Below, piece after piece: positions 31,310-57,232 of a stretch of 64,000 nt of DNA. Under the pieces are notes generated by a model, which had not been told where the DNA came from, did not search any database, and saw only the letters and a program-made list of their open reading frames with translations. How positions within the stretch are numbered: position 1 is the first letter of the stretch; each line of letters starts with the position of its first letter. The translations under genes and the position numbers were made by a program. The stretch spans positions 186,001-250,000 of the IMG/VR virus record IMGVR_UViG_3300033145_003233. The stretch is one strand, 5' to 3'.

Positions 31310-31346
31310 AATATATGGTTAAAATTTTTTACTTGTCTGGAAAATT
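31310..31346 (-). promoter_or_regulatory. Box promoter TTTTCCAGACA-N18-TATATT
   Basis: CAGACA at 31339-31334; -10 at 31315-31310. Confidence 0.65.
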
Positions 31347-31374
31347 ATTATAACCACTTTCTACAAAATTGCAA
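31347..31374 (-). promoter_or_regulatory. sigma70-type promoter
   Basis: TTGCAA-16-TATAAT. Confidence 0.6.
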
Positions 31375-31437
31375 GTCTATTTATATTTATTTGTAACTCC
31401 TTTATTAACAGATAGTTATAAATAAGGAGTATCACTT

Positions 31438-32013
31438 TCACTTTCCAACCAGCTCTGTCATATTTTCATATTCCCACCATACCAGCAAAGAACTTTCTTG
31501 ACATTTCTGAATGCCTCTCTTGATAGTAGTACAAGTAGTGCATTCTTTTATACCCAATATTTCTCCAGTTTCTTTAAGACTTCTTTCTTCGAAATAATAA
31601 TGAAAAATTGCTTTCAACTGTCTTTTAGTGGGTTCTTGAAGTAACAACTTCCAGAGTAATTCATTGTTCTCTAATCTTAGCAAGCCGGGATCTTCCCATG
31701 GGTTTTTCCTCTCAAGATAACTATCTTCGTGTCCATCATCAACTCCTCCACTAACGTCCACATTAGTTAAAAGCTTGGGTCTTTTTCTTCTCACTTTTTT
31801 AATGGAAATATCTCTTGTTTGGGACTTGATATAACTCAACATATCAAACTTTGCTCTATTAACTACTATGGGTGGATCAGGATGATAAAAATCCCCGCAT
31901 GTTAACCATGCTTCATTAACGAGTTCATTAGGTTCAAAACGGCCGCCCCAATTCTTCGCAATTTTATGCGCCACTCTGGTGATAGGTTCTAAAAGTTCTT
32001 CAAATCTTGCCAT
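31438..32013 (-). CDS. Sigma-70-family RNA polymerase sigma factor (regions 2 and 4)
   Basis: ELVNEAW (region 2); QLKAIFHYYFEERSLKETGEILGIKE...IKRGIQK (region 4 HTH, FliA/ECF-like). Confidence 0.8.
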   Translation of the reverse strand: MARFEELLEPITRVAHKIAKNWGGRFEPNELVNEAWLTCGDFYHPDPPIVVNRAKFDMLSYIKSQTRDISIKKVRRKRPKLLTNVDVSGGVDDGHEDSYLERKNPWEDPGLLRLENNELLWKLLLQEPTKRQLKAIFHYYFEERSLKETGEILGIKECTTCTTIKRGIQKCQESSLLVWWEYENMTELVGK

Positions 32014-32046
32014 GTAATCTTTCTACTTTAACATTTCAACTTTGGC

Positions 32047-32075
32047 ATTATACCATAATCTACTTTTGTTTGCAA
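32047..32075 (-). promoter_or_regulatory. sigma70-type promoter for the phage sigma gene
   Basis: TTGCAA-17-TATAAT. Confidence 0.7.
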
Positions 32076-32100
32076 CAAAAAAATATAAAAAAATATAAGT

Positions 32101-32469
32101 TTATTTGGCATTTTCTTTTGCCCATTTTACTGCTTCTCTGATAGCACGCCTAACCATTCTTGTTTGCTCTTTCTGTGGGACAGTCTCAATGCTAAATAGT
32201 TTACAAGCCAGCATCTCAACTATTGGATGGTTAGGCTCTACAACCAGATCTCCGAGTCTATCTCTCTGTTTTTTCTCTCTCACTATCTCCTTACAAAATT
32301 GCTGTGCCCATTTTGCTGCCACCTTAACTGTATTTTCTACCATTTTCATCTTCTCTTTTGGCGGCACAATCTCAATACCGAATAGTTCCGTTCCCAAAAG
32401 TTCAGCTAATGGATGATCAGGTTGAACAGCAGAAGCATTAAGCTTCTTTGTAAGTTCGTCTCTATCCAT
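32101..32469 (-). CDS. Hypothetical protein with internal duplication
   Basis: V.P.HP..E.L...LF.IE.VP.KE...MV......A.KWA occurs twice. Confidence 0.65.
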   Translation of the reverse strand: MDRDELTKKLNASAVQPDHPLAELLGTELFGIEIVPPKEKMKMVENTVKVAAKWAQQFCKEIVREKKQRDRLGDLVVEPNHPIVEMLACKLFSIETVPQKEQTRMVRRAIREAVKWAKENAK

Positions 32470-32480
32470 TTATTCTCTCT

Positions 32481-32777
32481 TTACAAAATTGGGAAATCAA
32501 AAACAGCGGAGGTAGCCTTAAGTTCAGCACCCCAACAACCACAACCAGCCAATTGCCCGCCACATTTAGGGCATCTCTCACAATCACAACCAAAATGATG
32601 AAGTTGGCCAGGCATTGCATTACAGTCGTGGCAAAAATAACCCCTATTAGGTTCTTTGCTAAAATCAACTCTAATCCTTTCAATGCCCATTTCCGATGAT
32701 GAGTTTTGTAAGTATCGGAGCGTACATCCATTTCCCTGTTTCATTTCTCTTTTGCAATCATTACAATCAACCGACAT
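32481..32777 (-). CDS. Cys-rich Zn-binding phage protein
   Basis: CHDC...G..H..GCDCERCPKCGGQL..CGC. Confidence 0.7.
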   Translation of the reverse strand: MSVDCNDCKREMKQGNGCTLRYLQNSSSEMGIERIRVDFSKEPNRGYFCHDCNAMPGQLHHFGCDCERCPKCGGQLAGCGCWGAELKATSAVFDFPIL

Positions 32778-32794
32778 AATTCTCCTTCTCGATT

Positions 32795-34138
32795 TTAAAT
32801 TTCATCCTCTATCTGTCTCAATATTTGTTCGGCAATAGCTTTAAGAGCATTATAGCCACCACCACCCTTTGAAATTTTGGCTTGGTTTTCCCAGAGCCGG
32901 GGTTGGGTAAGAGTTTTACTCTTCTTAAGAGAGTTATAAACATTCTCGATATTCCAGTCTATATCCCTATTGAAGAATTTGCTATACATGCGACCTAAAA
33001 GATATGACATACCAGCGATACCCAGAGAACGATGCATGATGTAATTGTCAGGATTTCTCCATATCTTAGGGCAAGCCCTTTTTAATGCTGACCAAAAAAC
33101 TGTCGTGATACGACTCAAATCATCTGCCTTCACTCCCTGAATAGTCCCTTCGCTCCAATACTCAGCTTGCATCCACTTAACAAGAGGTTTCATTCCAGTT
33201 ATAAAACTTGAAGAGCGAGAGCTTATTTTTTTACCCTTTGGAGTATCAGGCAATTCAACCAGATTATGCCATGGGCTAATCCGATCATCACACATTGCGG
33301 TAACTGCTCCAGCAATAACAGCTTTTGTCACATCATCCCACGTCTGATTAGGACCAATGACAAGATGTTTGTTGTTATTAAAATCGACAATAGCGCTATG
33401 AGCAGTTGATACTCTTGTCTGTTTTCTATTGTGATTTAAAAAGAGACCCTCTTCCTCTGCATAAGAAAGTTGAGAGACACAGAAAGGAACAGTTAAATTG
33501 CTATAATTGATACCTCCGTCTGTAGCCATACTTGCCAAATGATAATGCAACAAAGCGATATAACCGAAACGCCGTGTTTGACCATCATAAGTCCAAAGAG
33601 TGCAATCAGCTGGAATCCTCAATATGCCCACCACCGAAGAAAGTTTACGTTTGGGAGCATCTGCCATCATATCCTTAAGGGGGATAAAAGTAACCTTCTT
33701 ATCCCGGTCATTGACCATCAGTTCTCCGAAACAGATATTCGACTCACCCTGCATAAACGTTCCAAATGCTCTACCGTTCTTCTCAGTGTTATTCCGTTGA
33801 TATCCCGGTTCTCCATCTTGATGATGATTATAATTAGGAACCTGTACGATAGAAGCTAACTGAGCCACAGTTAACTCTCCCGAATAATAGTAAATACCTT
33901 TCTGACATTTCATAACTACCGGGATTTCGAAATAAGATTGTTTGTCATTCTTATACTCATCCGGAACAATAGAAACATTGTCAGATTTAGCTATCCTAGC
34001 CATGGCTCCTTTCTGAGAAGATGTATGCATACTAGCTGATGTTTTTTGAGCTTGTGTTCTCCTTTTCTTTCCCTTCCTCTTCCTTGCTCTAGCTTCTTGT
34101 TTTTCTTTCGATCTTGACATCTTAGGACTTCCTTTCAA
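32795..34138 (-). CDS. DGQHR-domain (DndB/ParB-superfamily) protein with basic N-terminal tail
   Basis: LWTYDGQTRRFG; EGLFLNHNRKQTRVS. Confidence 0.75.
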   Translation of the reverse strand: MKGSPKMSRSKEKQEARARKRKGKKRRTQAQKTSASMHTSSQKGAMARIAKSDNVSIVPDEYKNDKQSYFEIPVVMKCQKGIYYYSGELTVAQLASIVQVPNYNHHQDGEPGYQRNNTEKNGRAFGTFMQGESNICFGELMVNDRDKKVTFIPLKDMMADAPKRKLSSVVGILRIPADCTLWTYDGQTRRFGYIALLHYHLASMATDGGINYSNLTVPFCVSQLSYAEEEGLFLNHNRKQTRVSTAHSAIVDFNNNKHLVIGPNQTWDDVTKAVIAGAVTAMCDDRISPWHNLVELPDTPKGKKISSRSSSFITGMKPLVKWMQAEYWSEGTIQGVKADDLSRITTVFWSALKRACPKIWRNPDNYIMHRSLGIAGMSYLLGRMYSKFFNRDIDWNIENVYNSLKKSKTLTQPRLWENQAKISKGGGGYNALKAIAEQILRQIEDEI

Positions 34139-34181
34139 CTTAATAATCTAATCAACATCAAAACTTCACATCTCTCACTAT

Positions 34182-34210
34182 TATATACGCTCGAACTGAT
34201 GACTTGTCAA
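34182..34210 (-). promoter_or_regulatory. sigma70-type promoter for the DGQHR gene
   Basis: TTGACA-17-TATATA(AT). Confidence 0.7.
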
Positions 34211-34211
34211 G

Positions 34212-34929
34212 CTATTTTTTATTTTGTTCTTCTTTTTCTCTTAAAGTTCTAATACTATCTTTCACCAATGTCACTCCCTCATCTATCTTCAATTTCTTTT
34301 TAACTTTTGTGACTTTCTCTCCCAATCCGAATAAATGTATATTTTTAACGAACCACTCTATCCCCCATTTACAGAACATTCCCAATACCACTACTATAAG
34401 AGCTATCAAGAGGGGGAAAAAAAGAAAAAGAAGAAAACCAAAAAGCAGTGTTGTAACAAGGCATATGACTCCTGCGACTACAACAACCAACAAAGCTTTT
34501 TTCTTCTTTTTATTCAGCATTTTCATAATCTATTATTTCAAATCTTTCTGTATCATCTTTCATTTCTTTTCTTAACCCAATCGCACCGCCACAGGCACAT
34601 ACAACGGTATAAAGAAGTTTAATTTCTATTTTCTGTTCCCAGTTATTATTAGATAGCTCTATAACTTTTGCATTACCCATTATTTCATAAGAATTATTCC
34701 CTATTAAAAGAATCGCCCTATGTTCGCTATCCCTTTTCAAAAGTAGCTTACGTTTCATATCATCCATTGCTATTCTAAAATACAGCCAATAGACAACTTT
34801 ATCATCTATCATATGAATAGTAACACTAGCAACCTTATCTATATGTATCTCAAAAGCTGGATCTGTGCAAAATTTTATATAATTATTTTTTCCATTTGGC
34901 ACAAAAAATTTATAATCTATTTTTTTCAT
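34212..34929 (-). CDS. Membrane protein (34212-34526) and RF-motif protein (34510-34929)
   Basis: The second ORF ends ERFEIIDYENAE. Confidence 0.65.
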
Positions 34930-34936
34930 TCAAAAG

Positions 34937-34965
34937 ATTATAACAATCTTTCACTTTCTTGTCAA
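34937..34965 (-). promoter_or_regulatory. Consensus sigma70 promoter with extended -10
   Basis: TTGACA-17-(TGT)TATAAT. Confidence 0.85.
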
Positions 34966-35234
34966 GTCTTTTTTTTCATATGTCGAACTAAACCATTATA
35001 TTTAGCAAGAAACTGATGTATTGTCGATAATTTCCATCCACATTTTCTAAAGAGAAAATTACTAATTGATCGTAACATAGATTGATGAGGTCTAGAGGTA
35101 ACTTTACTTACTGGAATTTGTGGATTTTGTTTTATCATAAAATAAAGAGCATTTGCCATGTGTTCTGGGCTATGAGAGGGAGCAACATGGGCCACCATCC
35201 TCATCATTTCATCTTTAAAAGTAGTATATTTCAT
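34962..35234 (-). CDS. Hypothetical protein, possibly HTH
   Basis: ORF directly downstream of a box promoter. Confidence 0.55.
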   Translation of the reverse strand: MKYTTFKDEMMRMVAHVAPSHSPEHMANALYFMIKQNPQIPVSKVTSRPHQSMLRSISNFLFRKCGWKLSTIHQFLAKYNGLVRHMKKKT

Positions 35235-35258
35235 TTTTCTCTCTTTAACGAGGTTTTC

Positions 35259-35297
35259 ATACTACTCCATGCAAAAATTATTTGTCTGGAAAATTAA
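35259..35297 (-). promoter_or_regulatory. Box promoter TTTTCCAGACA-N18-TAGTAT
   Basis: CAGACA at 35288-35283; -10 at 35264-35259. Confidence 0.7.
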
Positions 35298-35339
35298 CAA
35301 AAAAAGGCATAAGCCCCTTAGACGCAGGAAGTTATGCCA
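35298..35339 (-). terminator. Intrinsic terminator
   Basis: GGCATAA-C-TTCC-N9-GGGG-C-TTATGCC followed by T7. Confidence 0.7.
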
Positions 35340-35386
35340 ATTGAGATAGTCTCGCCTTTTTAATTTTCGGTTTTGAAGACTCACTC
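35298..35386 (-). ncRNA. Candidate ~85-nt small RNA
   Basis: Lies between a box promoter (-10 at 35395-35390) and a terminator; 5' hairpin GAG.AGTCTT/GAGACT.CTC; no credible ORF. Confidence 0.45.
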
Positions 35387-35389
35387 AAC

Positions 35390-35428
35390 AAGCTACGTCT
35401 CAGAAAAAACATTTGTCTGGAAAATTAA
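35390..35428 (-). promoter_or_regulatory. Box promoter TTTTCCAGACA-N18-TAGCTT
   Basis: CAGACA at 35419-35414. Confidence 0.65.
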
Positions 35429-36511
35429 TTATTCCACAATTTCTGCAATTGAATTTACTTCTCTTTGGAACTTAGCATAATCGTCCCCGCCAAGAGCTTC
35501 CCTAGTATAAGAGATGTATTTAGAACTTATATCTATTCCCACATATTTTCTATGATAATGTTTGCAAACATGACCTGTCGTTCCTGTTCCATTGAAAGGA
35601 TCGAGAACTAAACACTCTTGAGCTAGGCCGTCCAAGCAATCACAGCCGGACTCCCATTCTAAGATATTACTTTTCTTTCTTACCCATGGAGTTTTACATT
35701 GAGAGCAACATCCCCCTGAAGAAGTTCCAGCCATAAGACATGGTTTAATTAAATCTATAGGATATATAGCAAAATGTTTTATCTTACTATTAGCAGTAGC
35801 TACTTCCCAAATATCTCTCTTATTACGTTTTATATGATCTGATAATTTTTCATCATCAGAAAGACCTTCCTTTAAATCATCTATTATTTTTCTCATCTTC
35901 TCATATGTCTTATCCTGAGATTTTCCACTAATAGCATAATTATCATCTTGATAATCTTTTCTTTTTTTTACTCTATTCTTAGAATATGCTCGTCTAATAG
36001 AGATTTCTTTCTGAGGTTCTTTAATGGCTTCATAATCGTAGAAGTACTTTTTATTTTTCGAGAAAAGAAACAAATGCTCATACGATTTTGAAGGTCTATT
36101 TTTAACGCTCTCAGGCATAGGATTCGTTTTCTGCCATATGACATCACAACGCAAATACCATCCAGCATCCCTCATAGCAAATGCCACCATCCACGGAATA
36201 CCTAGTAAATCTTGTGGTTTAAGAGAAGATCCCTTAATAGCTTTCTTACAATAACCATCTCCTATATTGAGCCAGAAGGTTCCATCTTTCCTTAATGTTC
36301 TCCTAACCTCTTCTGAGATTGCTACCAGATTTGCGACATATTCTTCAGGAGTTTCCTCTTGTCCCAACTGCTCCTTTTCTCCGTAATCTCTCTGGTCCCA
36401 ATAGGGAGGACTAGTAATAGCACAGTGGAAAGTATTATCATCGAAGTCCCTTAAGGATGTTAAAGTATCCCCTACTATTAGCTTGAATTTAAAAATCTGT
36501 TCATCACTCAT
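35429..36511 (-). CDS. Beta-class DNA methyltransferase (N4-C/N6-A)
   Basis: TSPPYW (motif IV) precedes VLDPFNGTGTT (motif I); Cys-rich insert. Confidence 0.92.
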   Translation of the reverse strand: MSDEQIFKFKLIVGDTLTSLRDFDDNTFHCAITSPPYWDQRDYGEKEQLGQEETPEEYVANLVAISEEVRRTLRKDGTFWLNIGDGYCKKAIKGSSLKPQDLLGIPWMVAFAMRDAGWYLRCDVIWQKTNPMPESVKNRPSKSYEHLFLFSKNKKYFYDYEAIKEPQKEISIRRAYSKNRVKKRKDYQDDNYAISGKSQDKTYEKMRKIIDDLKEGLSDDEKLSDHIKRNKRDIWEVATANSKIKHFAIYPIDLIKPCLMAGTSSGGCCSQCKTPWVRKKSNILEWESGCDCLDGLAQECLVLDPFNGTGTTGHVCKHYHRKYVGIDISSKYISYTREALGGDDYAKFQREVNSIAEIVE

Positions 36512-36519
36512 ACAAGCTT

Positions 36520-36548
36520 AGTATATGAAAAATGTTATCACTTTTCAA
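36520..36548 (-). promoter_or_regulatory. sigma70-type promoter for the MTase
   Basis: TTGAAA-17-TATACT. Confidence 0.65.
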
Positions 36549-36550
36549 GA

Positions 36551-36579
36551 AAAAAATGCCCCCTAAAAAGAGGGCATTC
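36551..36579 (-). terminator. Intrinsic terminator
   Basis: ATGCCCTC-TTTTTA-GGGGGCAT followed by T-tract. Confidence 0.75.
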
Positions 36580-36621
36580 CGGGTGGGTGATGAAACGCAC
36601 CATAACACGCAGCACTTGGAA

Positions 36622-37125
36622 TTATTTAAAATCAGCTTCTAACATCTGACTTTCTTTTGTACGAAGGACACACTCTACGAATACTACAGTCATGCAATAA
36701 GATAGAAGAGACACATCGTTATCAGTTATTTTTTGCTTCTTTTCCGCAGTCATTTTTAAAAGCAAAGCTACAAGATCCTCAATATAAATAGCAATATGCC
36801 CCCATATAATCTTGCGCATACTCTCTATATAAGAGATACAAGCTTCCGTATCTTGTAAATTAGGACAAGGTTCTGAAATTTCTTTTATCATTAATTCTAC
36901 AAAATCTTCATCTCTGTAATTGTGTGGAGGATATTTGCTATATTTCTTTGGCTCTAACCTCATCTCGCTCAATACTAACCTGAGACAATCATAGAATAGA
37001 AGATCAATACCATCTGACAATTTCTGTTCGGACAAAAAATCTTTCATAGGGGAAAGCTTCCCCTTCATTATTTCCCACGTCTCATCAATAAATGTGATGA
37101 CTTTTATTTTATCCTTATCGCTCAA
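36622..37125 (-). CDS. Helical hypothetical protein, paralog of 37201-37713
   Basis: Shared F..CL.LVL.E..L, .R...WG and D..LL..C motifs. Confidence 0.65.
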   Translation of the reverse strand: MSDKDKIKVITFIDETWEIMKGKLSPMKDFLSEQKLSDGIDLLFYDCLRLVLSEMRLEPKKYSKYPPHNYRDEDFVELMIKEISEPCPNLQDTEACISYIESMRKIIWGHIAIYIEDLVALLLKMTAEKKQKITDNDVSLLSYCMTVVFVECVLRTKESQMLEADFK

Positions 37126-37165
37126 ATTCTAATCCTCAATAAAAATTGTCCATACAAGCCCTTCA

Positions 37166-37200
37166 CCTATACCACTAACAAAAAACATTTGTCTGGAAAA
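37166..37200 (-). promoter_or_regulatory. Box promoter TTTTCCAGACA-N18-TATAGG
   Basis: CAGACA at 37195-37190; imperfect -10. Confidence 0.55.
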
Positions 37201-37713
37201 TTAATTATCTTCTAAAATTTCTATCTCTTTCTCTTTTATCTCAAGTTGCACAATAATCAAAGAGACACACTGAAAAAGTAATGCCATATCTTCTGTATCG
37301 TTCATATGGGGGAATTTTCTAACTAGCTGAATAAGTTTATCCTTATGGGGAACCATACTTCCCCATACACACTCTCTCAGCTTCTCAAGAGTTTTTAATT
37401 TATCTTCTTGACTATTATCTTCTTCTACAAACTTCCAAAGAGAGGCCTCCTCGATAATCCTTAAGAAAGCTCCTTCTGGGCTTTTATCAAAAAGCAACTT
37501 TCCAATCTTTCCATCGGAGCATACAAAATCTTTTTCATATAAAGATATCTCAGTTAACACTAACGTCAGGCATTGAAAAAAAGCAAGAAAATCATGTTGC
37601 GTTATTCTTCTTTCTCCTGAAGCTAGGGTATTGAGTTCTTCTTTACGCAGTCTCATTTCGACCCAGCAACCATCTCTAATGGCTTCTTGTGCTAATCTAT
37701 TAGTATCTTCCAA
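37201..37713 (-). CDS. Helical hypothetical protein (paralog pair)
   Basis: As above. Confidence 0.65.
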   Translation of the reverse strand: MEDTNRLAQEAIRDGCWVEMRLRKEELNTLASGERRITQHDFLAFFQCLTLVLTEISLYEKDFVCSDGKIGKLLFDKSPEGAFLRIIEEASLWKFVEEDNSQEDKLKTLEKLRECVWGSMVPHKDKLIQLVRKFPHMNDTEDMALLFQCVSLIIVQLEIKEKEIEILEDN

Positions 37714-38118
37714 TTAACTATCACCATCTTCTCTGAAATTGTATTCATCTGCTTTTTTATTATGTTCTACTGCTCGTTGATTTAACCATTCTGCCAGCTC
37801 TTTACGTTTTTCAACGGACAACGGAACGCCCTCTGCATTATGTATAAGCACTGATGGAAGAACATTCTCCGGCATCTTCTGCATCACAAATGGCTCTTCA
37901 ATTAATCTTCTTAATTGCAATTGCATCATAGCATCTGAGTCTAATCCCAGAGCATAAACTATTGCCCAAAACCATTCCATATCATCTGAGGGAGGGGCAT
38001 AGCCCTGTTCTATATCAGATAATTCGGAAGGTGGCATCTTTATGGTATCTGCAAATTTTCTTAAGCCCATCCCTGCCTTATGTAATCGCAAATCTTTTAA
38101 CAGTTGACCAAAAAACAT
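37714..38118 (-). CDS. XRE-family HTH protein
   Basis: FGQLLKDLRL...GLRKFADTIKMPPSELSDIEQG..PP. Confidence 0.8.
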   Translation of the reverse strand: MFFGQLLKDLRLHKAGMGLRKFADTIKMPPSELSDIEQGYAPPSDDMEWFWAIVYALGLDSDAMMQLQLRRLIEEPFVMQKMPENVLPSVLIHNAEGVPLSVEKRKELAEWLNQRAVEHNKKADEYNFREDGDS

Positions 38119-38119
38119 T

Positions 38120-38773
38120 TTATATCTCCAAAACTATTGGTTCTTTGTTCATCCTATATTGCTCATCTACCAAAGAACAATTAACAAACTTAATACCTTC
38201 ATGTTCTTCGACTCCATACCCATCATGATTATGTCCGAAAATAGCTATTTTAGGTTTTATCTTAAGTATCCTTTTTAACAAGGACACAGAACCTATCTGT
38301 CTAGAGCGACCATTATATTTAACTGTGTCCATAATACCATAAGGAGGACTATGACATACTAAAATATCAGTATCGTCTGGGATATTTTCCCAATGAAGTT
38401 TTATTCTGTCAGAATTTTTATTGAATGCCCAATTATTAAAAGGCAACTGCCAAGGAGTCCCATAAATCTTCTGCCCCATTAACTCAATGCTCTCATCTTC
38501 AAGATAATGAAAATTAGCATTCATTTTAGGAACTCTCTTTTTATCCGTCTCCCATATCCAGTCATGATTACCAGCAACAACCACACACTCCTTAACAGGT
38601 TGATCTACAAGCCAATACCGAAAATCTACACTTAACCATTCAGCTTGTTGCTCTATGGATAAATAAGCCTCATGATAAGCAGGGCACAGATCCCCTGCCA
38701 CCAAAAGCAAGTCTGCCTCTGGTACAGGGAATTTTAAATTACCATGCATATCTGCAATACACGCTATCTTCAT
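38120..38773 (-). CDS. Calcineurin-like metallophosphoesterase
   Basis: DMHG, AGD, GNHD, HSPP, GHNH. Confidence 0.92.
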   Translation of the reverse strand: MKIACIADMHGNLKFPVPEADLLLVAGDLCPAYHEAYLSIEQQAEWLSVDFRYWLVDQPVKECVVVAGNHDWIWETDKKRVPKMNANFHYLEDESIELMGQKIYGTPWQLPFNNWAFNKNSDRIKLHWENIPDDTDILVCHSPPYGIMDTVKYNGRSRQIGSVSLLKRILKIKPKIAIFGHNHDGYGVEEHEGIKFVNCSLVDEQYRMNKEPIVLEI

Positions 38774-39537
38774 TATTTTTTCGCAGGTTGTATCGTAAGA
38801 TCAACCATCCCTACAAAATATTTTTGTTTTTTACTAAGCACTTTTTGAAGGGCATCATCCACAGTTTTAGACAATTTATCAAAAACTGGATAAACCCTTC
38901 TAGAAGGAGAATCATATTCGAACATAACAAAGCGTGCTCCTCTCCTTCTTCCTTCCAGAGTCCACTTCTCTCTTTGTTTCTGCCTAACAGGTTCAAACAA
39001 ATCTGAAAAAAATTCAAAAAATCCCATCTTTGTCTCCTAATTTAATTGCAGTTTATGTTCTTTCATCCATTCTTTGGACCCAGCTATTTCTTCTGGTTGT
39101 AACCATTTAGCTTCTTCGGTTAAAAACCTATCATTTTTATGACTAATAATAAATCTAGCCGCGTCTTTCAGATTACCAGCATAAATTACAGAACCTTGTT
39201 TAAACTTAGAGCGATTATAACGTTTATCCGTTTCTATAATATCTTCGCTCATCTCTGTTTTAACTACTAGCCAGTGTCCTGATCTTCTCTTTTCATAAGG
39301 GAAATAACGAGTCTTTCCCCAAGGTATTCCATATAGCCCATACCGAATGTCTATATCTTTTGTGAACTTTTCTGCTTCTATATATCCATCAAGGGGATAT
39401 TTATTACCCCCTACATCCATCCATTCTTCATCAACATATACCAGCATAAAAACATAAAAACCTTTTACTTTCATAATCCGTACCTGCCACAACAAGTTGC
39501 CATTACTAAATAGCATTATATACGAATTATCTTTCAC
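38773..39537 (-). CDS. Two hypothetical ORFs (38773-39027, 39037-39537)
   Basis: ORF track. Confidence 0.6.
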
Positions 39538-39546
39538 TTACAAGAG

Positions 39547-39586
39547 AAAAAAGTGTGCAAAATAGATAATTATTCTGCACACTTTT
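39547..39586 (-). terminator. Hairpin terminator after the RNA ligase gene
   Basis: AAAAGTGTGCAGAAT / ATTTTGCACACTTTT followed by T-tract. Confidence 0.7.
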
Positions 39587-39597
39587 CAGGTCAATTC

Positions 39598-40812
39598 TTA
39601 CAAATCATCAGCAAATCTAGTAGCCGCAGATGATGGTAAATATCCTAGTAAAACATTTGCCTTTGGTCTGAAAGCAGTAAACATTTTCCTACGAGAAAGT
39701 GAACTAAAATCATCAAGTGCTGCATGAAACTTATTTTTCCTCATTAAGAAAATATATTTTATTGACTCATTAAACTTCCTTTTACCAAAAGGTTGAGGAC
39801 GTTGAGCTAGATAAAGTCCTAACTCTTTATCAGACATATGTTCAGTAAGGTCATACATATCCTCTACCTCAGAAACAAATGACTCCAACTTTTGAGAAAG
39901 AATCCAAACGATAGTATCGAAGTCTTTTTCTAGTTCCTCAGGAAGTTCCTTTTTCACTTCGTCCAAATCGTCACCATTCAATAATAAATCCCAGATAGCT
40001 AATGGAGTTACCTTTGAAATCAGTTTATGGATACGAACATACTCTGCACCTTTTACCTTTATACGAACACCGCTCTCAAAACGGATAACATATCCTTCTT
40101 CATTTTGAGTTAGAGTCTCAGCCTTTTCCACAATAGATGTCATGTCGTCAAAATCATGCTTAGGCACAAATGCTACTCTTAACTTCTTGCTTGCCTCTAC
40201 TTGAAGATCTTCATAAGAGTACTCTACACCTTGAGGATCAAAAATAGCCAACAACACTAACCCTGAGAAATTGTAATTTACAACTATTTTATTCTCTGGA
40301 TAAATTATCTCGAACAGATAAGTGTTCTTTTTCCAAGCTGACCGAAGGACAACATGATTGCTGATTATCCATTCCTCAGCCCACTTAGCTTGTTCAGATG
40401 TAAAAGAGCCACACGTAGCAACTCTCCATGCTCCCTCGTAGTAGAACATGATTCCAAGAGAACCATCCATTTTTTCAGTAACAGTGAATTCTGATTCTAT
40501 AATAGATGCAGAACCTGATTCTATTTCACCGAAATTAAAAAACTTCATGAAAGGAGAAGCAACTACCACCTTATTTTTAAGGTCCAGAATTAGACCTCTT
40601 GACATTAGAGTAAAGACATTCCAGTTTCTTCCAGCAACACAGTCAATAGAATACTTGAACAAAGCCAAATGTGGAAAATCTGGATGGTAATTAACATTGA
40701 TATTTCCTCTGTTAATTTCCTCGAACAGTCCATCAACAAGGGCTTGAAACTCCATTACTCTAGATGGATGTTTCTTTCCATGTTTTAATAATATTTCCAT
40801 TACGTCATTCAT
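39598..40812 (-). CDS. RNA ligase, T4 Rnl1-like
   Basis: SPFMKFFN, TEKMDGSLG (motif I), EGYVIRF (motif IV), KVKGAEY (motif V). Confidence 0.9.
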   Translation of the reverse strand: MNDVMEILLKHGKKHPSRVMEFQALVDGLFEEINRGNINVNYHPDFPHLALFKYSIDCVAGRNWNVFTLMSRGLILDLKNKVVVASPFMKFFNFGEIESGSASIIESEFTVTEKMDGSLGIMFYYEGAWRVATCGSFTSEQAKWAEEWIISNHVVLRSAWKKNTYLFEIIYPENKIVVNYNFSGLVLLAIFDPQGVEYSYEDLQVEASKKLRVAFVPKHDFDDMTSIVEKAETLTQNEEGYVIRFESGVRIKVKGAEYVRIHKLISKVTPLAIWDLLLNGDDLDEVKKELPEELEKDFDTIVWILSQKLESFVSEVEDMYDLTEHMSDKELGLYLAQRPQPFGKRKFNESIKYIFLMRKNKFHAALDDFSSLSRRKMFTAFRPKANVLLGYLPSSAATRFADDL

Positions 40813-40836
40813 AATAACACCTTAGAAAATACCAAT

Positions 40837-40866
40837 AAAAAAAGATGCGGTTAAAAAGCCGCATCT
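40837..40866 (-). terminator. Intrinsic terminator
   Basis: AGATGCGG-N8-CCGCATCT followed by T-tract. Confidence 0.75.
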
Positions 40867-40905
40867 CTATCCTCTACTCCAGTGGGTTATAGGTTATAGC
40901 TTTTT

Positions 40906-41235
40906 CTATCTCGGGCTTCGACAGATATAGCGACATTTCTCTTTATAAACTTTCCAGAAAGACGTTCTATCCTTCCTGTTAAATTCACCCTTAACGAGAG
41001 CACGCTTAAAAGCGATTTTCCTGCCTATTACATCATTAGGCTGATCCTTGCAATGCTGCTTAGCTGTTCCCAACCCAACTGCATCAGTCACACGTCTGTT
41101 ATTATCTGGATCTAATGCATAAATGTTACAACTTATAATCGACACTTTTTTGCCATTTTCTCCAGGCCTCGCAGAAGCACAAAGCGAACGGCAGAAAGAA
41201 ACCGCATACGTCTTATTTCCAACATTGACCTTCAT
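40906..41235 (-). CDS. Conserved phage hypothetical protein
   Basis: G.A..H.KD.....GRKIAFKRAL pattern. Confidence 0.6.
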   Translation of the reverse strand: MKVNVGNKTYAVSFCRSLCASARPGENGKKVSIISCNIYALDPDNNRRVTDAVGLGTAKQHCKDQPNDVIGRKIAFKRALVKGEFNRKDRTSFWKVYKEKCRYICRSPR

Positions 41236-41283
41236 CTTACACTCCTTAAATTATTCTACATCATTATCAATTATTAACCAATT

Positions 41284-41320
41284 ATACTATGGCTGAGAAA
41301 AAACATTTGTCTGGAAAATT
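41284..41320 (-). promoter_or_regulatory. Box promoter TTTTCCAGACA-N18-TAGTAT
   Basis: CAGACA at 41313-41308. Confidence 0.7.
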
Positions 41321-41372
41321 AATTATTCCCAAAATACTACACCAACAAATCTACATTTATACTCTAAAAATC

Positions 41373-41963
41373 CTACCCTGCTACTTTAACAATATCGGTA
41401 TTATACTTGTCAAATAGAATTAAGGCTTCTTTATAATTTTCATAATAAGCCATTTCTTGAGGAGTATGACCGTTATTGTCTCTTTGGTCTCTGTATTCTT
41501 TTACTTTGATAAATCTCTTAACCAAACGGAGATTTCTCATTGCTATAGCTTCGTGGAGAGGAGTCCTGCCATATCGAGTAGAGAGTTTTTCTTTTCTTGC
41601 TTCTACTTCTTCTGGGGTATCAGGCTCTACAATACCTTTGTCTATTAGTTCTTGCTGTTTACGTTGAAGCCTTTCTTCAACCTCTATGAGGTACTGATTT
41701 CTCTTTCTCCCTTTGATCTCCGGATGTTGCTCATAATTCTTTTGATGGTGTAACGAAAGAATCTCTTTTATTTTTACAGATGGTTCTTTACTGCTGAAAA
41801 TTATATCCGCTTCCTGCTCTAACAAACTTCCATCATCCTCGTATTCTACTTCATCAAATATCCCCGCTCCCTCCAAATCTTCCATAATTTTATTAAGGTG
41901 TTCTCTTTTTATGTCGTTCCTTAATAAGATATGTAGCATCCTATTTTTTTCCCGTACAGACAT
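41373..41963 (-). CDS. Ankyrin-repeat protein
   Basis: YGRTPLHEA...LVKRFI...RDNNGHTPQEMA. Confidence 0.8.
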   Translation of the reverse strand: MSVREKNRMLHILLRNDIKREHLNKIMEDLEGAGIFDEVEYEDDGSLLEQEADIIFSSKEPSVKIKEILSLHHQKNYEQHPEIKGRKRNQYLIEVEERLQRKQQELIDKGIVEPDTPEEVEARKEKLSTRYGRTPLHEAIAMRNLRLVKRFIKVKEYRDQRDNNGHTPQEMAYYENYKEALILFDKYNTDIVKVAG

Positions 41964-42021
41964 ACCAATTCTCCTATTAATAGGTCATTTATTAAATTCT
42001 TCAAAGAACCGTTATAACAAG

Positions 42022-42055: not shown

Positions 42056-42068
42056 TGAAAATATTAAC

Positions 42069-43887: not shown

Positions 43888-43915
43888 ATTATACAATTTT
43901 CTACTTTTTTGTCAA
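43888..43915 (-). promoter_or_regulatory. sigma70 promoter of the Ro60 gene, overlapped by an inverted repeat (43898-43922)
   Basis: TTGACA-16-TATAAT; TTTCTACTT-N7-AAGTAGAAA. Confidence 0.75.
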
Positions 43916-45719: not shown

Positions 45720-45737
45720 TTTTCAACTATAAAAATT

Positions 45738-47957: not shown

Positions 47958-47958
47958 T

Positions 47959-48255: not shown

Positions 48256-48307
48256 TAGTACCCTTTCTATTTATTTCCAAATACAATATTTTCCTGTTGT
48301 GAGCATC

Positions 48308-49920: not shown

Positions 49921-49993
49921 TTTGATCTCCCCATATAAACAATTCGTATATATATAGTTCTATCAAACCTGCTTTAATCCTTTTTCTACATTC

Positions 49994-50218
49994 TTACGCC
50001 TTCACATCAATATGAGTGATTTCTTCCTTCTTCTCTATCTTCTCTATTAATTTTAATTCATGGATACTCTTCACAAGAAAATATTCCACCTCTCTCAAAG
50101 ATTGTCTTACAGTTGCCATATCTTCATGTCCCTCTAAAGCCTTTCTAATGGCTGTTGTGCTCTCTTTTTTATTCCCCAACTGTTGTAGTAAACTGTACTT
50201 TTGATTATCAGTTATCAT
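49994..50218 (-). CDS. Hypothetical protein
   Basis: ORF track. Confidence 0.55.
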   Translation of the reverse strand: MITDNQKYSLLQQLGNKKESTTAIRKALEGHEDMATVRQSLREVEYFLVKSIHELKLIEKIEKKEEITHIDVKA

Positions 50219-51075: not shown

Positions 51076-51076
51076 T

Positions 51077-52820: not shown

Positions 52821-54128
52821 CTAATTATCTAATGATTTTCTAAAAATATTACTCCATGCCTTCCGAGACAAATAATCATAAAATCCTGACAAGGGAAGCC
52901 TTACCAGAATAAATAGAAAATATCTCAGTATGGGAAATTCAACAACCAACATAGCTAAAGCATACAATCTACCTATTAATTTGTAATCAGAGGTATAGGG
53001 ATAATTGATTTTAAACCTATTAAAAGTAGAACTTAATATAGAAGATTTAACATTGTCATCAAAAAATGCCGCTCCTGGGTATGGCTGAAAAACAGTAAAT
53101 TTACCAACATCAGGTTTTAATTTAAGAATCATATCAATAGTTTCTAGTGATTCTTTGTACGTCTCAGAAGGAGATCCGAACATAGCATATGTATGAAACT
53201 TAATCCCACACTTTTTAACTAACTCTATTTTCTTATAAATAAAATCATTCGTTAAGTTCTTACCTAATATCGAATTACGTATATGCTCATTACCACTTTC
53301 TACACCTATCCCTATTTGATAACATCCAGTTTCTACTAATTTTGCTAACAACTCCTCCGTGATAATTTCAAATCTAAGATGACACCAATATGGCAAATCT
53401 ACTTCTTCTGAATATCTATCCAAGAATTCTGAAGTCCACTTTTTGTTGGCCCCAAATGTTTCATCAAAAAATTCTATCCTTTTAGCATTCCCTTTGTAGG
53501 TATTTATTTCTTCAAAAATATCATCCATGTCCCTGAGTCTATAATATTTATTATTAAAAAGACTGTTTATTCCCTTGTTTGTACAAAAATTACAATTGTA
53601 GGGACATCCTCTAGCACAAGATATATATAAAGAATCTTCTAAAACAGTTTTATAATTATTATAAATTCTTCTGGAAGGGATTGGTATCTCATTACTTGGC
53701 AATAATTCTCCCAACTCATTCCTTTGCCCTTTTGTCCATAAAGATGGAATATTAAATGTGGATATATTTTCATCAATATTATTTAATAAAGTTAAAAGGG
53801 GTTTCTCTCCTTCTCCCATACAAATCATATCAATATTCTCATCAAAAACAATGTCAGGGTACGATGTGGGATGAGGCCCACCTACAACAGTCACAATCTT
53901 ATTATTTATACCTTTAACTTTTTTAACCATGTCCAAAAGCCAGCAATGATTAAGTGTAAGAGAATAAATCCCTATTACATGAGGATCAAAAGACTGAATC
54001 TTATAAGGCAACTTCCCATGACCGTCCATAAAAACATCACATTCATGTTTATCTTCGATATAAGAAGTCAATGTCATAATACTCAACCATCTTATACTAT
54101 CATTCTGAAGGAATAGAATCCTTGCCAT
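52821..54128 (-). CDS. Cobalamin-binding (class B) radical SAM protein
   Basis: VVGGPHPT, GEGE, RGCPYNCNFC, GVESG, YAMFGSPSET. Confidence 0.92.
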   Translation of the reverse strand: MARILFLQNDSIRWLSIMTLTSYIEDKHECDVFMDGHGKLPYKIQSFDPHVIGIYSLTLNHCWLLDMVKKVKGINNKIVTVVGGPHPTSYPDIVFDENIDMICMGEGEKPLLTLLNNIDENISTFNIPSLWTKGQRNELGELLPSNEIPIPSRRIYNNYKTVLEDSLYISCARGCPYNCNFCTNKGINSLFNNKYYRLRDMDDIFEEINTYKGNAKRIEFFDETFGANKKWTSEFLDRYSEEVDLPYWCHLRFEIITEELLAKLVETGCYQIGIGVESGNEHIRNSILGKNLTNDFIYKKIELVKKCGIKFHTYAMFGSPSETYKESLETIDMILKLKPDVGKFTVFQPYPGAAFFDDNVKSSILSSTFNRFKINYPYTSDYKLIGRLYALAMLVVEFPILRYFLFILVRLPLSGFYDYLSRKAWSNIFRKSLDN

Positions 54129-55331
54129 TTTTATTATCCTTCTCCCCCGTAACGCTCTTAGTCCTCTCCTCCAGAGTTTCCCATACTTCTAATGCAGCTT
54201 TTAAATAAGTTCCTACATAACCCACATAGCTTTGCACAAACTGTTTTAACGTTCTTCTTCTACCTTGCTCCATCCCTAGTTGGACTGCTAATCCTATTAT
54301 TTCTTCATAAACATCTCTTCCTTGATCTTCTTTAGAATAAGTCAGATGCCAAGCATCTAAAGTTTCGCTAGGATGTATATTAGCACATCTCTCAGTTTTT
54401 CCCCTATCTAAACCTTCCCATTCAATCCCTTCTTCATAAACCTTATCTCCCTTTTCCATAGCAGTTCTCAAAGCTTTTAGAAGAGGATCTGTAACATCAT
54501 TAAACATAACTGGCTCTCCATCTGAGGGCCATGGCTTATTGTTTCCTTCTTTAAAAGGCTCTTTTGTATTCATTCTGAAAATCCCCTTGCCTGAGAGTAG
54601 AGAGGGGCCAGTAGAGCCATGCCATCTATTAACCCAGACATGTACCCTCTTATATAATCCTCTCCCCCGCATTTTTCTGGATTGTTTTTTAAATTTTTCT
54701 CTGCTGCTTTATATTTCTTTTCTAATCGCTCATAATCCCTTTTCCGTTCTTCTGTTCTTTTATCTATTGCAGAATTTTCACTCATTTAATCTCCCCTTCC
54801 ATATCTAACATATCAAAGCGATTAGACTGAGACTCATCAGAAGATACTTCAACAACCTCTCCTTGCTCTGGCTCCTGTGATCCCCCAAATACAACATCAG
54901 TCACTTCTACCTTAAAAATTTTCATAATAGATGAAACGATTCTTAGACACAATAACATAGAAGCGAACACAGGCCAGAAAGCAATCAATAACATACCATT
55001 ATCATCAACTGAGAAAACTTGATTAGTAACCCTATAATAAAGAGCTACCACAATAATCCCCAATAGGAAATATAACACAGCCCCCGCTGCTAAAATCAAT
55101 TCTAGCCCCATCCCCATATCCTCTTAAATCTAACTATCCAAATGGACAGTCGCAATGATCATCTACTGTGCCACAATCTGGACAAATTTTCTTACTTTCT
55201 AACATCCTAAGATATTTCTCACTATCTCTCTTGTAAGCTGTTCTATCTTTACGTAGATTTATTATCTCTCCGTCTCGTACTTTGAGAATCTTAATTAAAT
55301 CTTCTTTAGTTCTACCTATATCATATTCCAT
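54100..55331 (-). CDS. Four hypothetical ORFs (54100-~54573, 54570-54785, 54782-55117 TM with RF motif, 55134-55331)
   Basis: ORF track; 54782 ends NRFDMLDMEGEIK. Confidence 0.65.
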
Positions 55332-55332
55332 A

Positions 55333-56448
55333 TTATTCGTCAGAGAAGTCTACTACTTCCCCCTTCGCCTCTTTTTTATTCTTCATAAGAAGATAATCTT
55401 CATTAAGCATTTTTAGAATAGCCCTACCGCAAGACCATTCTTCTCTTTCTTTTAGAGAGCAAATAACTATACCTTCTCTAATATGGTCAGCACCATTTCT
55501 TTTAGCGAGAAAAGAAGGGCCTGTAGAAAGGCCTTTCATCAAATTCATATTAAATGACCCCTCGATAATAAGAGGAACCATAGGGACAGAAAAAGCCTTA
55601 CATAGATTATTAAATAGTTCCCAATCAACATACTTACCATCTATCTTCAATGAAAATGCCACAAAGTTAAGAGAATTAGGTTTTCCATAATGCATAGATT
55701 TATGTCCACCTCTTACTCTTCCATACACTTCTCCGTATAGAGTAGCACTTTTCTTGCAGCCATAACGAGGATCATTACCTAAAGCCGAAAGAAGATATTT
55801 AACTGACTCAAGAGTAAAGGGATACCAGTAGCTATTAGAAAGCATTTCTTCATCTGTAGGCATTTTTCTCTTAACCCTATGAGAACCACCTTTCCACTCT
55901 AGTTCTCCTTCCTCAGATTTGAAGAAGCCTATCCTACAATTAGTCCCATCTATTTTTTCTGTAACACAAACTTCCTCTCCCTTTTCAAAAATATCAGGGA
56001 AATTTCTGATATTCTCTATGTCTGTATATTTAGTAAACAGAGGGTCATCGGGAGCAGCATCTCCAGCCATAGCTCTTAGAGGTGGTTCGTATTTAGTAAT
56101 TCCATAATGTTCAGCTACATCTGTCCCTACTTCCCAATTTTCTTCGTTATTTATAATCAGTCCGTAAGACATCGCCCCACGAAGTCTGGCACACCTAACG
56201 CGATTGTGAAGTTTACCTCCGAGATAGTTACCCACTCCAAGTCTCTCTACAAGTTCGAGAGGAAGCACAGCATCAACAGGGATATAAACAACAATATCTC
56301 CTACTTTATAATCTCCCTTGCCAACTATGCACTCCCATCCCTTGACAACGGCAATTTCTAGCCTGTCAGCATTCTCGTGCGAGAGAACTTCTTTTATATC
56401 ACAAACTTCTACTATTAAACTACTGCTCATCCTTCTTCCTTTCTTCAT
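55333..56448 (-). CDS. RNA ligase, DRB0094 family
   Basis: N-terminal H.NADRLE...GW...V.KG; TEKIDGTN, REGIVI, KMLNEDYL. Confidence 0.9.
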   Translation of the reverse strand: MKKGRRMSSSLIVEVCDIKEVLSHENADRLEIAVVKGWECIVGKGDYKVGDIVVYIPVDAVLPLELVERLGVGNYLGGKLHNRVRCARLRGAMSYGLIINNEENWEVGTDVAEHYGITKYEPPLRAMAGDAAPDDPLFTKYTDIENIRNFPDIFEKGEEVCVTEKIDGTNCRIGFFKSEEGELEWKGGSHRVKRKMPTDEEMLSNSYWYPFTLESVKYLLSALGNDPRYGCKKSATLYGEVYGRVRGGHKSMHYGKPNSLNFVAFSLKIDGKYVDWELFNNLCKAFSVPMVPLIIEGSFNMNLMKGLSTGPSFLAKRNGADHIREGIVICSLKEREEWSCGRAILKMLNEDYLLMKNKKEAKGEVVDFSDE

Positions 56449-57193
56449 CCTTCAATCTTTTTTTTGCTTCATCAACTGTTTCAGAGATATCTTCCCATTG
56501 AGCATCTCTATCATCTGGAGAGCCACAAAAACTAATCTCTGAGAGTATAGCTCCAAAAACCTCAAAAACAGTAAATCTATTTTTACCTTCTACTACTGGC
56601 TCTTCATTCCCACATGTGTTCTCGGGTCTAATTATAAAATCTTCATTTAATTTAAGAGGCAAATGTTTCATTCTATACAAAGGAGTAAACTCTATTGCAA
56701 AACTAGTATAGGGCATATCAGGATCGAATGGTTCTTCTTCACTCGGTTCGTGTTTGCCCCATCCATGTACACCAACAGCAATACTTACCTCATTAACATC
56801 ATCATCTTTAGGTTCGGTTAATTTCTTACCGAACATCGGGTCTTTATCATTTTTATGTTTTTCATAATAAAGAGCATAATCAAATTGATCGATATCCCAG
56901 CTACAAAAGATATAGTCTAAATCTTCTTCACTATCTGGAGGACAATCTTTTTTAATTTCTTCCAAAAATGGTTCTAACGGAAATCTTCCAAGATGAGAAC
57001 TAAAAATAATTTCCATTATTTCCTCTTCCTCTTCTATTATAGAGAAAAAGTCCAGCAAGGTAAAATCTTCATCTATTTCTACAACATCGCTAAGATGAGA
57101 AATTATACTCTCTACCTTCTCATGAACATAATTTTTATGCCCAGGAATATAGTTATTTGTATAAAATATTCCACTTTTCGTCAAAGTTATCAT
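56420..57193 (-). CDS. Acidic conserved phage hypothetical protein
   Basis: ORF downstream of a box promoter. Confidence 0.7.
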   Translation of the reverse strand: MITLTKSGIFYTNNYIPGHKNYVHEKVESIISHLSDVVEIDEDFTLLDFFSIIEEEEEIMEIIFSSHLGRFPLEPFLEEIKKDCPPDSEEDLDYIFCSWDIDQFDYALYYEKHKNDKDPMFGKKLTEPKDDDVNEVSIAVGVHGWGKHEPSEEEPFDPDMPYTSFAIEFTPLYRMKHLPLKLNEDFIIRPENTCGNEEPVVEGKNRFTVFEVFGAILSEISFCGSPDDRDAQWEDISETVDEAKKRLKDEERKKDEQ

Positions 57194-57195
57194 AT

Positions 57196-57232
57196 ATTCT
57201 ATTTCTACTATTTTCTACTTGTCTGGAAAATT
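57196..57232 (-). promoter_or_regulatory. Box promoter TTTTCCAGACA-N18-TAGAAT, embedded in the MTase 3' end
   Basis: CAGACA at 57225-57220; the box encodes ...INFPDK*. Confidence 0.7.

What the first reader, a model, noticed from the sequence alone, without database searches (positions are those of the whole stretch)
31310..57232. Phage-specific promoter class: TTTTCCAGACA box with a fixed 18-nt spacer to a TAnnnT -10
Seen: six single copies (CAGACA at 31339, 35288, 35419, 37195, 41313, 57225), all in the coding orientation at or near gene ends. Exactly 18 nt downstream lie TATATT, TAGTAT, TAGCTT, TATAGG, TAGTAT and TAGAAT. Known: T4 middle promoters replace the -35 with an activator box and keep the sigma70 -10. 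Inference: a middle-type regulon read either by an activator plus host sigma or by the phage sigma factor at 31438.
Basis: partly seen in the sequence, partly recalled or inferred. Interest (0 to 1): 0.7.

Follow-up and report, generated by a model that had tools for sequence, protein, structure and literature searches.

The report
Activator-box promoters of huge phages
The six motifs belong to about 45 phage promoters in which a fixed 9-base box replaces the usual -35 element, and the box is most likely bound by an uncharacterised 228-residue phage protein that also controls its own gene.

Summary
All six exact copies of TTTTCCAGACA lie on the coding (-) strand, and a TA-rich hexamer sits exactly 18 nt downstream of each (five TAnnnT, one TATAGG).

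The window is part of a 547,943-bp phage genome. That genome holds about 44-48 such sites, against none in a shuffled control. Nearly all are intergenic and point the same way as the genes.

Three other huge-phage genomes and many metagenome contigs have the same layout: box, A/T tract, then a -10-like hexamer at a fixed distance. The box sequence differs between lineages.

In each lineage the same box sequence also forms two palindromes, about 92 bp apart. They bracket a host-type promoter in front of one conserved gene, the 228-aa ORF at window 421-1107.

That protein has no Pfam, PHROG or PDB match. Its predicted structure resembles winged-helix DNA-binding domains.

Best reading: this is a delayed-early or middle promoter class. 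The 228-aa protein binds the box in place of a -35 contact, and a sigma70-type sigma reads the -10. The same protein represses its own promoter and some early promoters.

The ECF-like sigma at 31438-32013 is a weaker candidate reader. No RNA data exist, so transcription start sites, timing and the box-binding protein are all inferred.

The parts
31310..31344 (-). Box promoter 1: box 31344-31334, 18-nt spacer, hexamer TATATT 31315-31310. It drives the 96-aa ORF 31003-31293 and the genes after it.
   Evidence: matrix score 35.5
31347..31374 (-). Host-type promoter TTGCAA-N16-TATAAT ending 2 nt before box 1, so the box covers its predicted start site.
35259..35293 (-). Box promoter 2 (hexamer TAGTAT), directly after an intrinsic terminator. 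It drives ORFs 34962-35234, 34510-34929 and onward.
35302..35319 (-). Terminator-like hairpin plus T run between box promoters 3 and 2.
35390..35424 (-). Box promoter 3 (hexamer TAGCTT), 6 nt after the stop of the methylase gene. It would give a transcript of about 90 nt ending at the terminator.
37166..37200 (-). Box promoter 4 (hexamer TATAGG, which lacks the final T), 2 nt after the upstream stop codon.
41284..41318 (-). Box promoter 5 (hexamer TAGTAT), the best-scoring site in the window. It lies upstream of the 109-aa ORF and the RNA ligase gene.
   Evidence: score 43.7
57196..57230 (-). Box promoter 6 (hexamer TAGAAT). It overlaps the last codons of ORF 57215-58234 and lies upstream of the 257-aa ORF and the second RNA ligase.
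1234..1271 (.). Distal palindrome GTCTGGAA-N20-TTCCAGAC. Its right arm ends 12 nt before the -35 of the 228-aa gene's promoter.
1193..1221 (-). Host-type promoter TTGACA-N17-TATGAT of the 228-aa gene, lying between the two palindromes.
1142..1179 (.). Proximal palindrome. Its first arm starts 14 nt after the -10, about +8 to +16 of the predicted transcript.
421..1107 (-). Gene of the 228-aa protein, the proposed box-binding regulator. Its predicted fold includes a winged-helix-like domain.
31438..32013 (-). ECF/SigW-like sigma factor (191 aa), the rival candidate reader. It has its own TTGCAA-N17-TATAAT promoter.

Best explanation
These are promoters of a phage-specific class. The box occupies about -39 to -31, where a -35 element would sit. 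An A/T tract follows, and a sigma70-type -10 (TAnnnT) lies at a fixed distance of 18 nt in this lineage. The proposed mechanism is as follows; every step is inferred, none is shown. The 228-aa protein (window 421-1107) is made early from its own host-type promoter. It binds single boxes and recruits or stabilises host RNA polymerase carrying a sigma that reads TAnnnT, most simply the host primary sigma. This switches on about 45 transcription units: small genes of unknown function, RNA ligases, a methylase and NAPRTase. The same protein bound to inverted box pairs around its own promoter, and to boxes at about +8 to +16 of some other host-type promoters, shuts those promoters down. That would give an early-to-middle hand-over.
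For: Promoter nature:
- The T1, A2, T6 conservation pattern of the hexamer, the rigid spacing, the intergenic position and the orientation with the genes.
- Sites directly after a terminator.
- Sites at the head of + strand gene blocks, which cannot be reached by read-through.
- None of these promoters has a consensus -35, while about 35 near-consensus host-type promoters exist in the same genome.

Conservation in other genomes (forward / reverse strand / reversed-pattern control):
- G001: 38 / 1 / 0, and G002: 13 / 0 / 0.
- G004: 36 / 0 / 0, with a different box (TGCCAGAGT) and a 16-nt spacer.

Link to the 228-aa gene:
- Two box palindromes flank its promoter in G000, G001 and G002.
- They are the only such palindromes in the two complete genomes.
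- Of 51 metagenome loci with enough upstream sequence, 40 have both palindromes, and they are 89-94 bp apart in 39 of the 40.
- Half-sites differ between lineages, and the single promoter boxes on the same contig carry that contig's own half-site.

Fold: the AF2 model has pLDDT 87. Most of the listed structural matches, including the top-ranked ones, are winged-helix DNA-binding domains, among them OmpR/PhoB and AfsR activators.

Repressor geometry: the box lies at about +8 to +16 of host-type promoters at genome 45532 and 436318, and at the 228-aa gene in three genomes.

No phage RNA polymerase was detected.
Against: - No binding or transcription data exist. No sequencing run was listed for this genome, and only DNA runs for a relative.
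- The winged-helix match is only moderate (Z 4.7-6.2), which the tool itself calls a common level.
- Residue-to-base covariation in the protein is not clean.
- A sigma of the window's type (s191 family) is present in all four large genomes, so it is not excluded.
- The distance from box to -10 differs between lineages (18, 16, 15, 14 nt), and the model does not explain this.
- In about half of this genome's sites the first gene's start codon or ribosome-binding site lies at or before the start site a canonical -10 would give.
- The palindromes could mark the gene as the most tightly regulated target rather than as the regulator.
Confidence: 0.55

Rival explanations
1. A phage sigma factor reads the box as its -35 and the hexamer as its -10. 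Candidates are the ECF-like s191 of the window or another of the four sigmas. The 228-aa gene would then be only a regulated target.
For: The two-block layout with rigid spacing is what sigma promoters look like. CAGACA sits where a -35 with an 18-nt spacer would be. The s191 family occurs in G000, G001, G002 and G004. In G004 a box promoter precedes the s191-like genes, which could be sigma autoregulation. All four sigma genes have host-type promoters, so they can be made early.
Against: s191 is ECF/SigW-like, and ECF sigmas are not known to use TAnnnT (my own knowledge). s190 has no ortholog in the complete genome G004, which still has 36 box promoters. A box precedes the s191-family gene in 1 of the 4 genomes. 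The conserved block is 12-18 bp, longer than a -35 element. Inverted box pairs without a -10 are not what a sigma would use. The spacing varies from 14 to 18 nt between lineages.
Confidence: 0.2
2. The promoters are ordinary early promoters read by the host sigma alone. The box is only the operator of a repressor, the 228-aa protein or another, that shuts them off later.
For: The densest clusters are runs of very small genes, which look like early host-takeover modules. The palindromes and the +8 to +16 boxes point to repression. GACA in the box matches four of six -35 positions in this lineage.
Against: In other lineages the bases at the -35 position do not resemble TTGACA (TGCCAGAGT at 16 nt, TTCCAGAAA at 14 nt). 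Box promoters mostly lack the TG extension. A separate near-consensus host-type class exists in the same genomes and drives the regulators.
Confidence: 0.15
3. Initiation geometry is not canonical: transcription starts right after the hexamer, giving leaderless or near-leaderless mRNAs.
For: The base after the hexamer is a purine in 82 of 82 strict sites. An ATG that opens a long ORF abuts the hexamer in 20 of 82. In this genome the ribosome-binding site often begins 3 nt after the hexamer.
Against: ATG-abutting sites carry a Shine-Dalgarno-like GG just before the hexamer (13 of 20 against 4 of 62, Fisher p = 3e-7). That fits translation from read-through transcripts. By my reading of the sites listed, host-type promoters here also favour a purine at that position (about 78%). 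No phage polymerase was found, and bacterial holoenzyme cannot start next to its -10 (established structural knowledge). In G001 and G002 the leaders are of normal length.
Confidence: 0.07
4. The motif is not a promoter but an RNA-level signal: a terminator, a processing site or a translational operator.
For: The motif sits between the stop and start codons, and a T run follows the box.
Against: No complementary arm precedes the box, and the upstream columns carry no information. The T run can be replaced by an A run. The TAnnnT pattern and the fixed DNA spacing are promoter features. Sites occur at divergent gene-block heads.
Confidence: 0.03

Closest known systems
T4 middle promoters (MotA activator with AsiA, sigma appropriation)
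   Same: The -35 is replaced by an activator box, a sigma70-type -10 is kept, the activator is made early, and many middle units lie downstream of early ones.
   Different: No MotA or AsiA homolog was found. The box ends 18 nt from the -10, not about 12. The sequence is unrelated. The proposed regulator also has palindromic operators at its own gene.
phi29 protein p4 (early-to-late switch)
   Same: One phage DNA-binding protein would both activate a promoter that lacks a -35 and repress host-type early promoters by binding near them.
   Different: p4 binds upstream of -35 at inverted repeats and works with p6. Here a single asymmetric box occupies the -35 position at about 45 promoters. No sequence similarity was detected: Pfam, PHROG and PDB searches found nothing.
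OmpR/PhoB and SARP (AfsR) winged-helix activators
   Same: A winged-helix-like domain and binding sites that overlap or replace the -35. These proteins are among the structural matches.
   Different: Those bind tandem direct repeats as dimers and carry receiver or BTAD domains. Here the box is single, no such domains were detected, and Z is only about 5.
Phage sigma cascades (SPO1 gp28, gp33/34)
   Same: Phage-specific two-block promoters, and several phage sigmas are encoded.
   Different: The -10 here is host-like TAnnnT, and the box co-varies with operators of a gene that is not a sigma.

Membership tests
T4-type MotA/AsiA middle promoters | A sigma70-type -10 is retained | tested here: met
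   T1, A2 and T6 are conserved in the hexamer across 82 strict sites in three genomes
T4-type MotA/AsiA middle promoters | Activator box centred near -30, about 12 bp from the -10 | tested here: not met
   The box ends 18 nt from the hexamer, centred near -35, and its sequence is unrelated
T4-type MotA/AsiA middle promoters | MotA and AsiA homologs are encoded | tested here: not met
   PF09158 and PF09010 give no match in the genome
Alternative-sigma two-block promoter | Two conserved blocks at a fixed spacing | tested here: met
   18 nt in G000, G001 and G002, 16 nt in G004, 14 nt in L149
Alternative-sigma two-block promoter | A cognate phage sigma co-occurs with the motif | tested here: inconclusive
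   The s191 family is in all four large genomes; s190 is absent from G004
Alternative-sigma two-block promoter | Transcription starts 5-8 nt after the -10 | not testable with these tools
   No RNA runs were listed
Winged-helix activators that overlap the -35 (PhoB/SARP-like) | Winged-helix DNA-binding domain | tested here: inconclusive
   AF2 pLDDT 87. Most of the listed matches, including the top-ranked ones, are winged-helix domains, but Z is only 4.7-6.2. Foldseek gave no significant hit
Winged-helix activators that overlap the -35 (PhoB/SARP-like) | Tandem direct-repeat sites bound by dimers | tested here: not met
   Promoters carry a single asymmetric box, and the 60 nt upstream show no conservation
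Intrinsic terminator | G+C-rich hairpin followed by a T run | tested here: not met
   There is no arm complementary to the box except at the two palindromes, and an A run can replace the T run

The most novel reading that the evidence does not exclude
The 228-aa protein founds an undescribed family of phage transcription factors (233 sequence clusters). Members act as a -35-replacing activator at dozens of promoters, as an autorepressor, and as a shut-off factor for early promoters. Their DNA specificity has drifted repeatedly, creating many natural orthogonal pairs of activator and promoter in uncultivated huge phages.
Probability: 0.5. Interest if true: 0.72.

Novelty: new variant of a known kind. 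Interest (0 to 1): 0.62.

Why it matters
Gene timing in uncultivated huge phages is almost unknown. Here sequence alone gives a testable circuit: a candidate regulator, its operators, and its regulon of about 45 promoters in this genome, with matching sets in relatives.

If the protein does read the box, it would be a new solution to the problem that T4 MotA solves. The lineage-specific boxes would supply ready-made orthogonal promoter and activator pairs.

The work also shows that the sigma in the window is not the obvious reader.

Tried and rejected
- Near-identity search of window 31000-42000 against GenBank phages: no match. Protein search with the 228-aa protein against the same collection: no match.
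- The pattern scan of IMG/VR gave mostly single chance hits. Only two contigs were real relatives.
- Sequencing-run searches: none was listed for this genome, and only DNA runs from salt-lake metagenomes for G001. No reads were laid.
- Rfam on the window: no family reached its threshold.
- The generic sigma70 scan does not show the six sites among the 60 matches it lists; 10 weaker matches were not shown.
- Homodimer prediction for the 228-aa protein: no verdict, because the fold itself failed without an alignment. It counts neither for nor against.
- Residue-to-base covariation: residue 151 (Y or T) tracks CCAGA against CCAGG in most rows, but largely through shared ancestry, with counterexamples in another clade. 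Inconclusive.
- Locus L144 (homolog P0007) showed no clear palindromes. In L150 the gene has no upstream intergenic region.
- Literature searches for the motif and for huge-phage promoters found nothing on this class.
- The terminator reading was rejected, because no hairpin arm precedes the box.
Full report
**1. The observation**

The hexamers 18 nt downstream are exactly those listed. Five fit TAnnnT and one is TATAGG. All genes in this region are on the - strand. The boxes lie at or just after gene ends, often with the stop codon TAA forming part of the conserved TAATT that precedes the box.

**2. Genome-wide picture**

The window is bases 186001-250000 of a single 547,943-bp virus record that CheckV rates complete.
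- The genome is 94% coding under the standard bacterial code, and most genes are on one strand.
- A weight matrix built from the sites finds 48 sites at score 14 or more and 44 at score 20 or more. A Markov-shuffled genome gives none.
- Nearly all sites are intergenic and point the same way as the next gene.
- They are densest at 155-168 kb, where almost every small gene has one. Further sites lie at 171-187 kb and 217-243 kb, with scattered ones elsewhere.
- The information profile shows TAATT-TTCCAGACA-A-nTG, a run of T or of A, and then a hexamer with T1, A2 and T6 conserved. That is the pattern of a sigma70-type -10.
- TCCAGAC is the most over-represented intergenic 7-mer in the genome.

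**3. Why these are promoters**
- Site 2 follows an intrinsic terminator.
- Sites at genome 45568, 70773 and 429372 lie in + strand gene blocks that are flanked by - strand genes; 45568 stands at the very head of its block. Such genes need their own promoters.
- No sequence complementary to the box lies upstream, so the T run is not a terminator tail.
- The genome has no detectable RNA polymerase of its own. There is no Rpb1 domain 2 match and no credible DFDGD catalytic motif; the single DFDGD match lies in a 2035-aa ORF and looks like chance. The T7-like family search was uninformative, because it rang in no control genome.
- It does encode four sigma factors. It therefore uses the host core enzyme, the strategy Iyer et al. 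described for jumbo phages that carry sigmas but no polymerase (PMC7824862).

**4. Other promoter classes in the same genome**
- About 35 near-consensus host-type promoters have TTGAAA or TTGACA, often followed by AGTGAAAG, with TATAAT 16-17 nt on and often a TG extension. They precede all four sigma genes and the 228-aa gene. These are the likely early promoters, which makes the box class a distinct, factor-dependent class.
- A third motif, TTTTTCCGATA(T/A), precedes about ten genes.

**5. Conservation in related phages**

Two other IMG/VR contigs carry the same box and spacing. The counts below are forward strand / reverse strand / reversed-pattern control.

| Genome | Size | Box and spacer | Matches |
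|---|---|---|---|
| G001 | 297.7 kb | same box, 18 nt | 38 / 1 / 0 |
| G002 | 350.9 kb | same box, 18 nt | 13 / 0 / 0 |
| G004 | 461 kb, terminal repeats, complete | TGCCAGAGT, 16 nt | 36 / 0 / 0 |

- In G001 and G002 the hexamer is usually followed by a normal leader with a ribosome-binding site 14-21 nt on.
- In G004 the common hexamer is TATAGT.
- Contig L149 uses TTCCAGA(A/G)A with a 14-nt spacer. L146 uses TTCGCAAAA with a 15-nt spacer.

**6. The link to the 228-aa gene**
- Upstream of window ORF 421-1107 lie two palindromes, GTCTGGAA-N20-TTCCAGAC, 92 bp apart. They bracket a TTGACA-N17-TATGAT promoter.
- The orthologs in G001 and G002 (53-54% identity) have the same arrangement.
- The palindromes occur nowhere else in G000 or in the complete genome G004.
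- The protein family is large: 233 clusters at E < 0.001.
- A metagenome scan returned 80 loci. Of the 51 with at least 185 nt of upstream sequence, 40 have both palindromes at the two conserved positions. The two palindromes are 89-94 bp apart in 39 of those 40.
- The half-site differs between lineages: TTCCAGAC, TTCCAGGC, TCCAGGTA, AACCAGTC, CCCAGAGT, ATCTAGAC and others.
- On each contig the single boxes upstream of other genes carry that contig's own half-site, followed by an A/T tract and a TAnnnT hexamer.
- So one factor reads both the palindromes and the promoter boxes, and that factor's specificity evolves together with this gene's neighbourhood. Autoregulation by the gene's own product is the simplest account.

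**7. The protein**
- It has no Pfam, NCBIfam, PHROG or PDB sequence match.
- The AF2 model is confident (pLDDT 87, pTM 0.82).
- Foldseek gives nothing significant.
- The exhaustive structural aligner returns mostly winged-helix DNA-binding domains, including the top-ranked matches (Z 4.7-6.2): Orc1/Cdc6, forkhead, histone H5, Fur, OmpR/PhoB and AfsR.
- This supports a DNA-binding role but is not decisive.

**8. Repressor geometry**
- At genome 45532 and 436318 a consensus host-type promoter is followed 11 nt after its -10 by the box. That puts the box core at about +8 to +16.
- At window site 1 the box overlaps the start site of the TTGCAA-N16-TATAAT promoter at 31374-31347.
- The first arm of the proximal palindrome at the 228-aa gene sits at the same +8 to +16 position in three genomes.
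- This fits a factor that blocks early promoters while switching on the box promoter just downstream.

**9. The sigma candidates**

| Sigma | Position in G000 | Type | Distribution and context |
|---|---|---|---|
| s191 | window 31438-32013 | ECF/SigW-like | Orthologs in all four large genomes. No box upstream here. In G004 its two paralogs lie behind a terminator plus a box promoter. |
| s190 / s199 | genome 256486-257664 | RpoD-like region 2 | s190 has no ortholog in G004. |
| s281 | genome 44614-45459 | FliA/WhiG-like | Ortholog in G004 at 54% identity. It is more likely tied to the CCGATA motif, which resembles the sigma28 -10 (my own knowledge). |

**10. Unresolved points**
- In 20 of 82 strict sites an ATG that opens a long ORF abuts the hexamer.
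- In this genome the ribosome-binding site often starts 3 nt after the hexamer.
- The base after the hexamer is always a purine.
- A canonical start 7 nt downstream would therefore miss the first gene's translation signals at many sites.
- The ATG-abutting sites are enriched for a Shine-Dalgarno-like GG just before the hexamer (13 of 20 against 4 of 62, p = 3e-7). This suggests those genes are translated from transcripts that began at the previous promoter.
- Only 5'-end mapping can settle this.
- The differences in spacing between lineages (14-18 nt) are also unexplained.

**11. Verdict**

The promoter reading is very likely. The identity of the factor is inferred, with the 228-aa protein at about 55% and a phage sigma at about 20%. 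The system works like T4 MotA or phi29 p4 but is not a member of either family.

Noticed in passing
genome-wide; in the window e.g. 32047-32075, 34937-34965, 43888-43915 (- strand): There are about 35 near-consensus host-type promoters: TTGAAA or TTGACA, often followed by AGTGAAAG, then (TG)nTATAAT. The AAGTGA extension after the -35 recurs in distant relatives (L149, L152, G004). It may reflect a shared host or another factor.
   Followed up: partly
G000 genome 32060, 63277, 64722, 258526, 374377, 503167, 529425; sigma gene at genome 44614-45459: An intergenic motif TTTTTCCGATA(T/A) resembles the sigma28/SigD -10. The genome encodes a FliA/WhiG-like 281-aa sigma that is 54% identical to one in G004. 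This may be a late promoter class.
   Followed up: partly
window 42069-43823 (-), with 39598-40812 and 55333-56448: A Ro60/TROVE protein with a vWA domain sits behind a perfect 12/12 host-type promoter. Two RNA ligases and an AAA ATPase lie nearby. Another relative's contig carries a Ro60 gene about 3 kb upstream of its 228-aa homolog. No Y RNA or other Rfam family was detected.
   Followed up: partly
window 35296-35383 (-): Box promoter 3 and the terminator at 35302-35319 bound a unit of about 90 nt with no ORF, possibly a small RNA. Its fold is not unusually stable (z = -1.1).
   Followed up: partly
82 strict sites in G000, G001 and G002: The base after the hexamer is always a purine. In 20 sites the ORF's ATG abuts the hexamer, with a Shine-Dalgarno-like GG inside the promoter spacer.
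   Followed up: yes
G000 genome 171686-183550, just before the window: A cluster of 27 tRNA genes on the - strand. In G004 a box with a weak hexamer fills the 38-nt gap between two tRNA genes.
   Followed up: partly
window 32795-34138 and 35429-36511 (-): A DndB-like protein and an N6/N4 DNA methylase, both downstream of box promoters.
   Followed up: no
window 61215-62864 (-) and 52821-54128 (-): A 549-aa protein with Ig-like (He_PIG), dockerin-like and metallophosphatase domains, and a B12-binding radical SAM protein.
   Followed up: no
G004 383999-385204: Two paralogs of the window's sigma lie directly behind a terminator and a box promoter. In that phage they are part of the box regulon.
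   Followed up: yes
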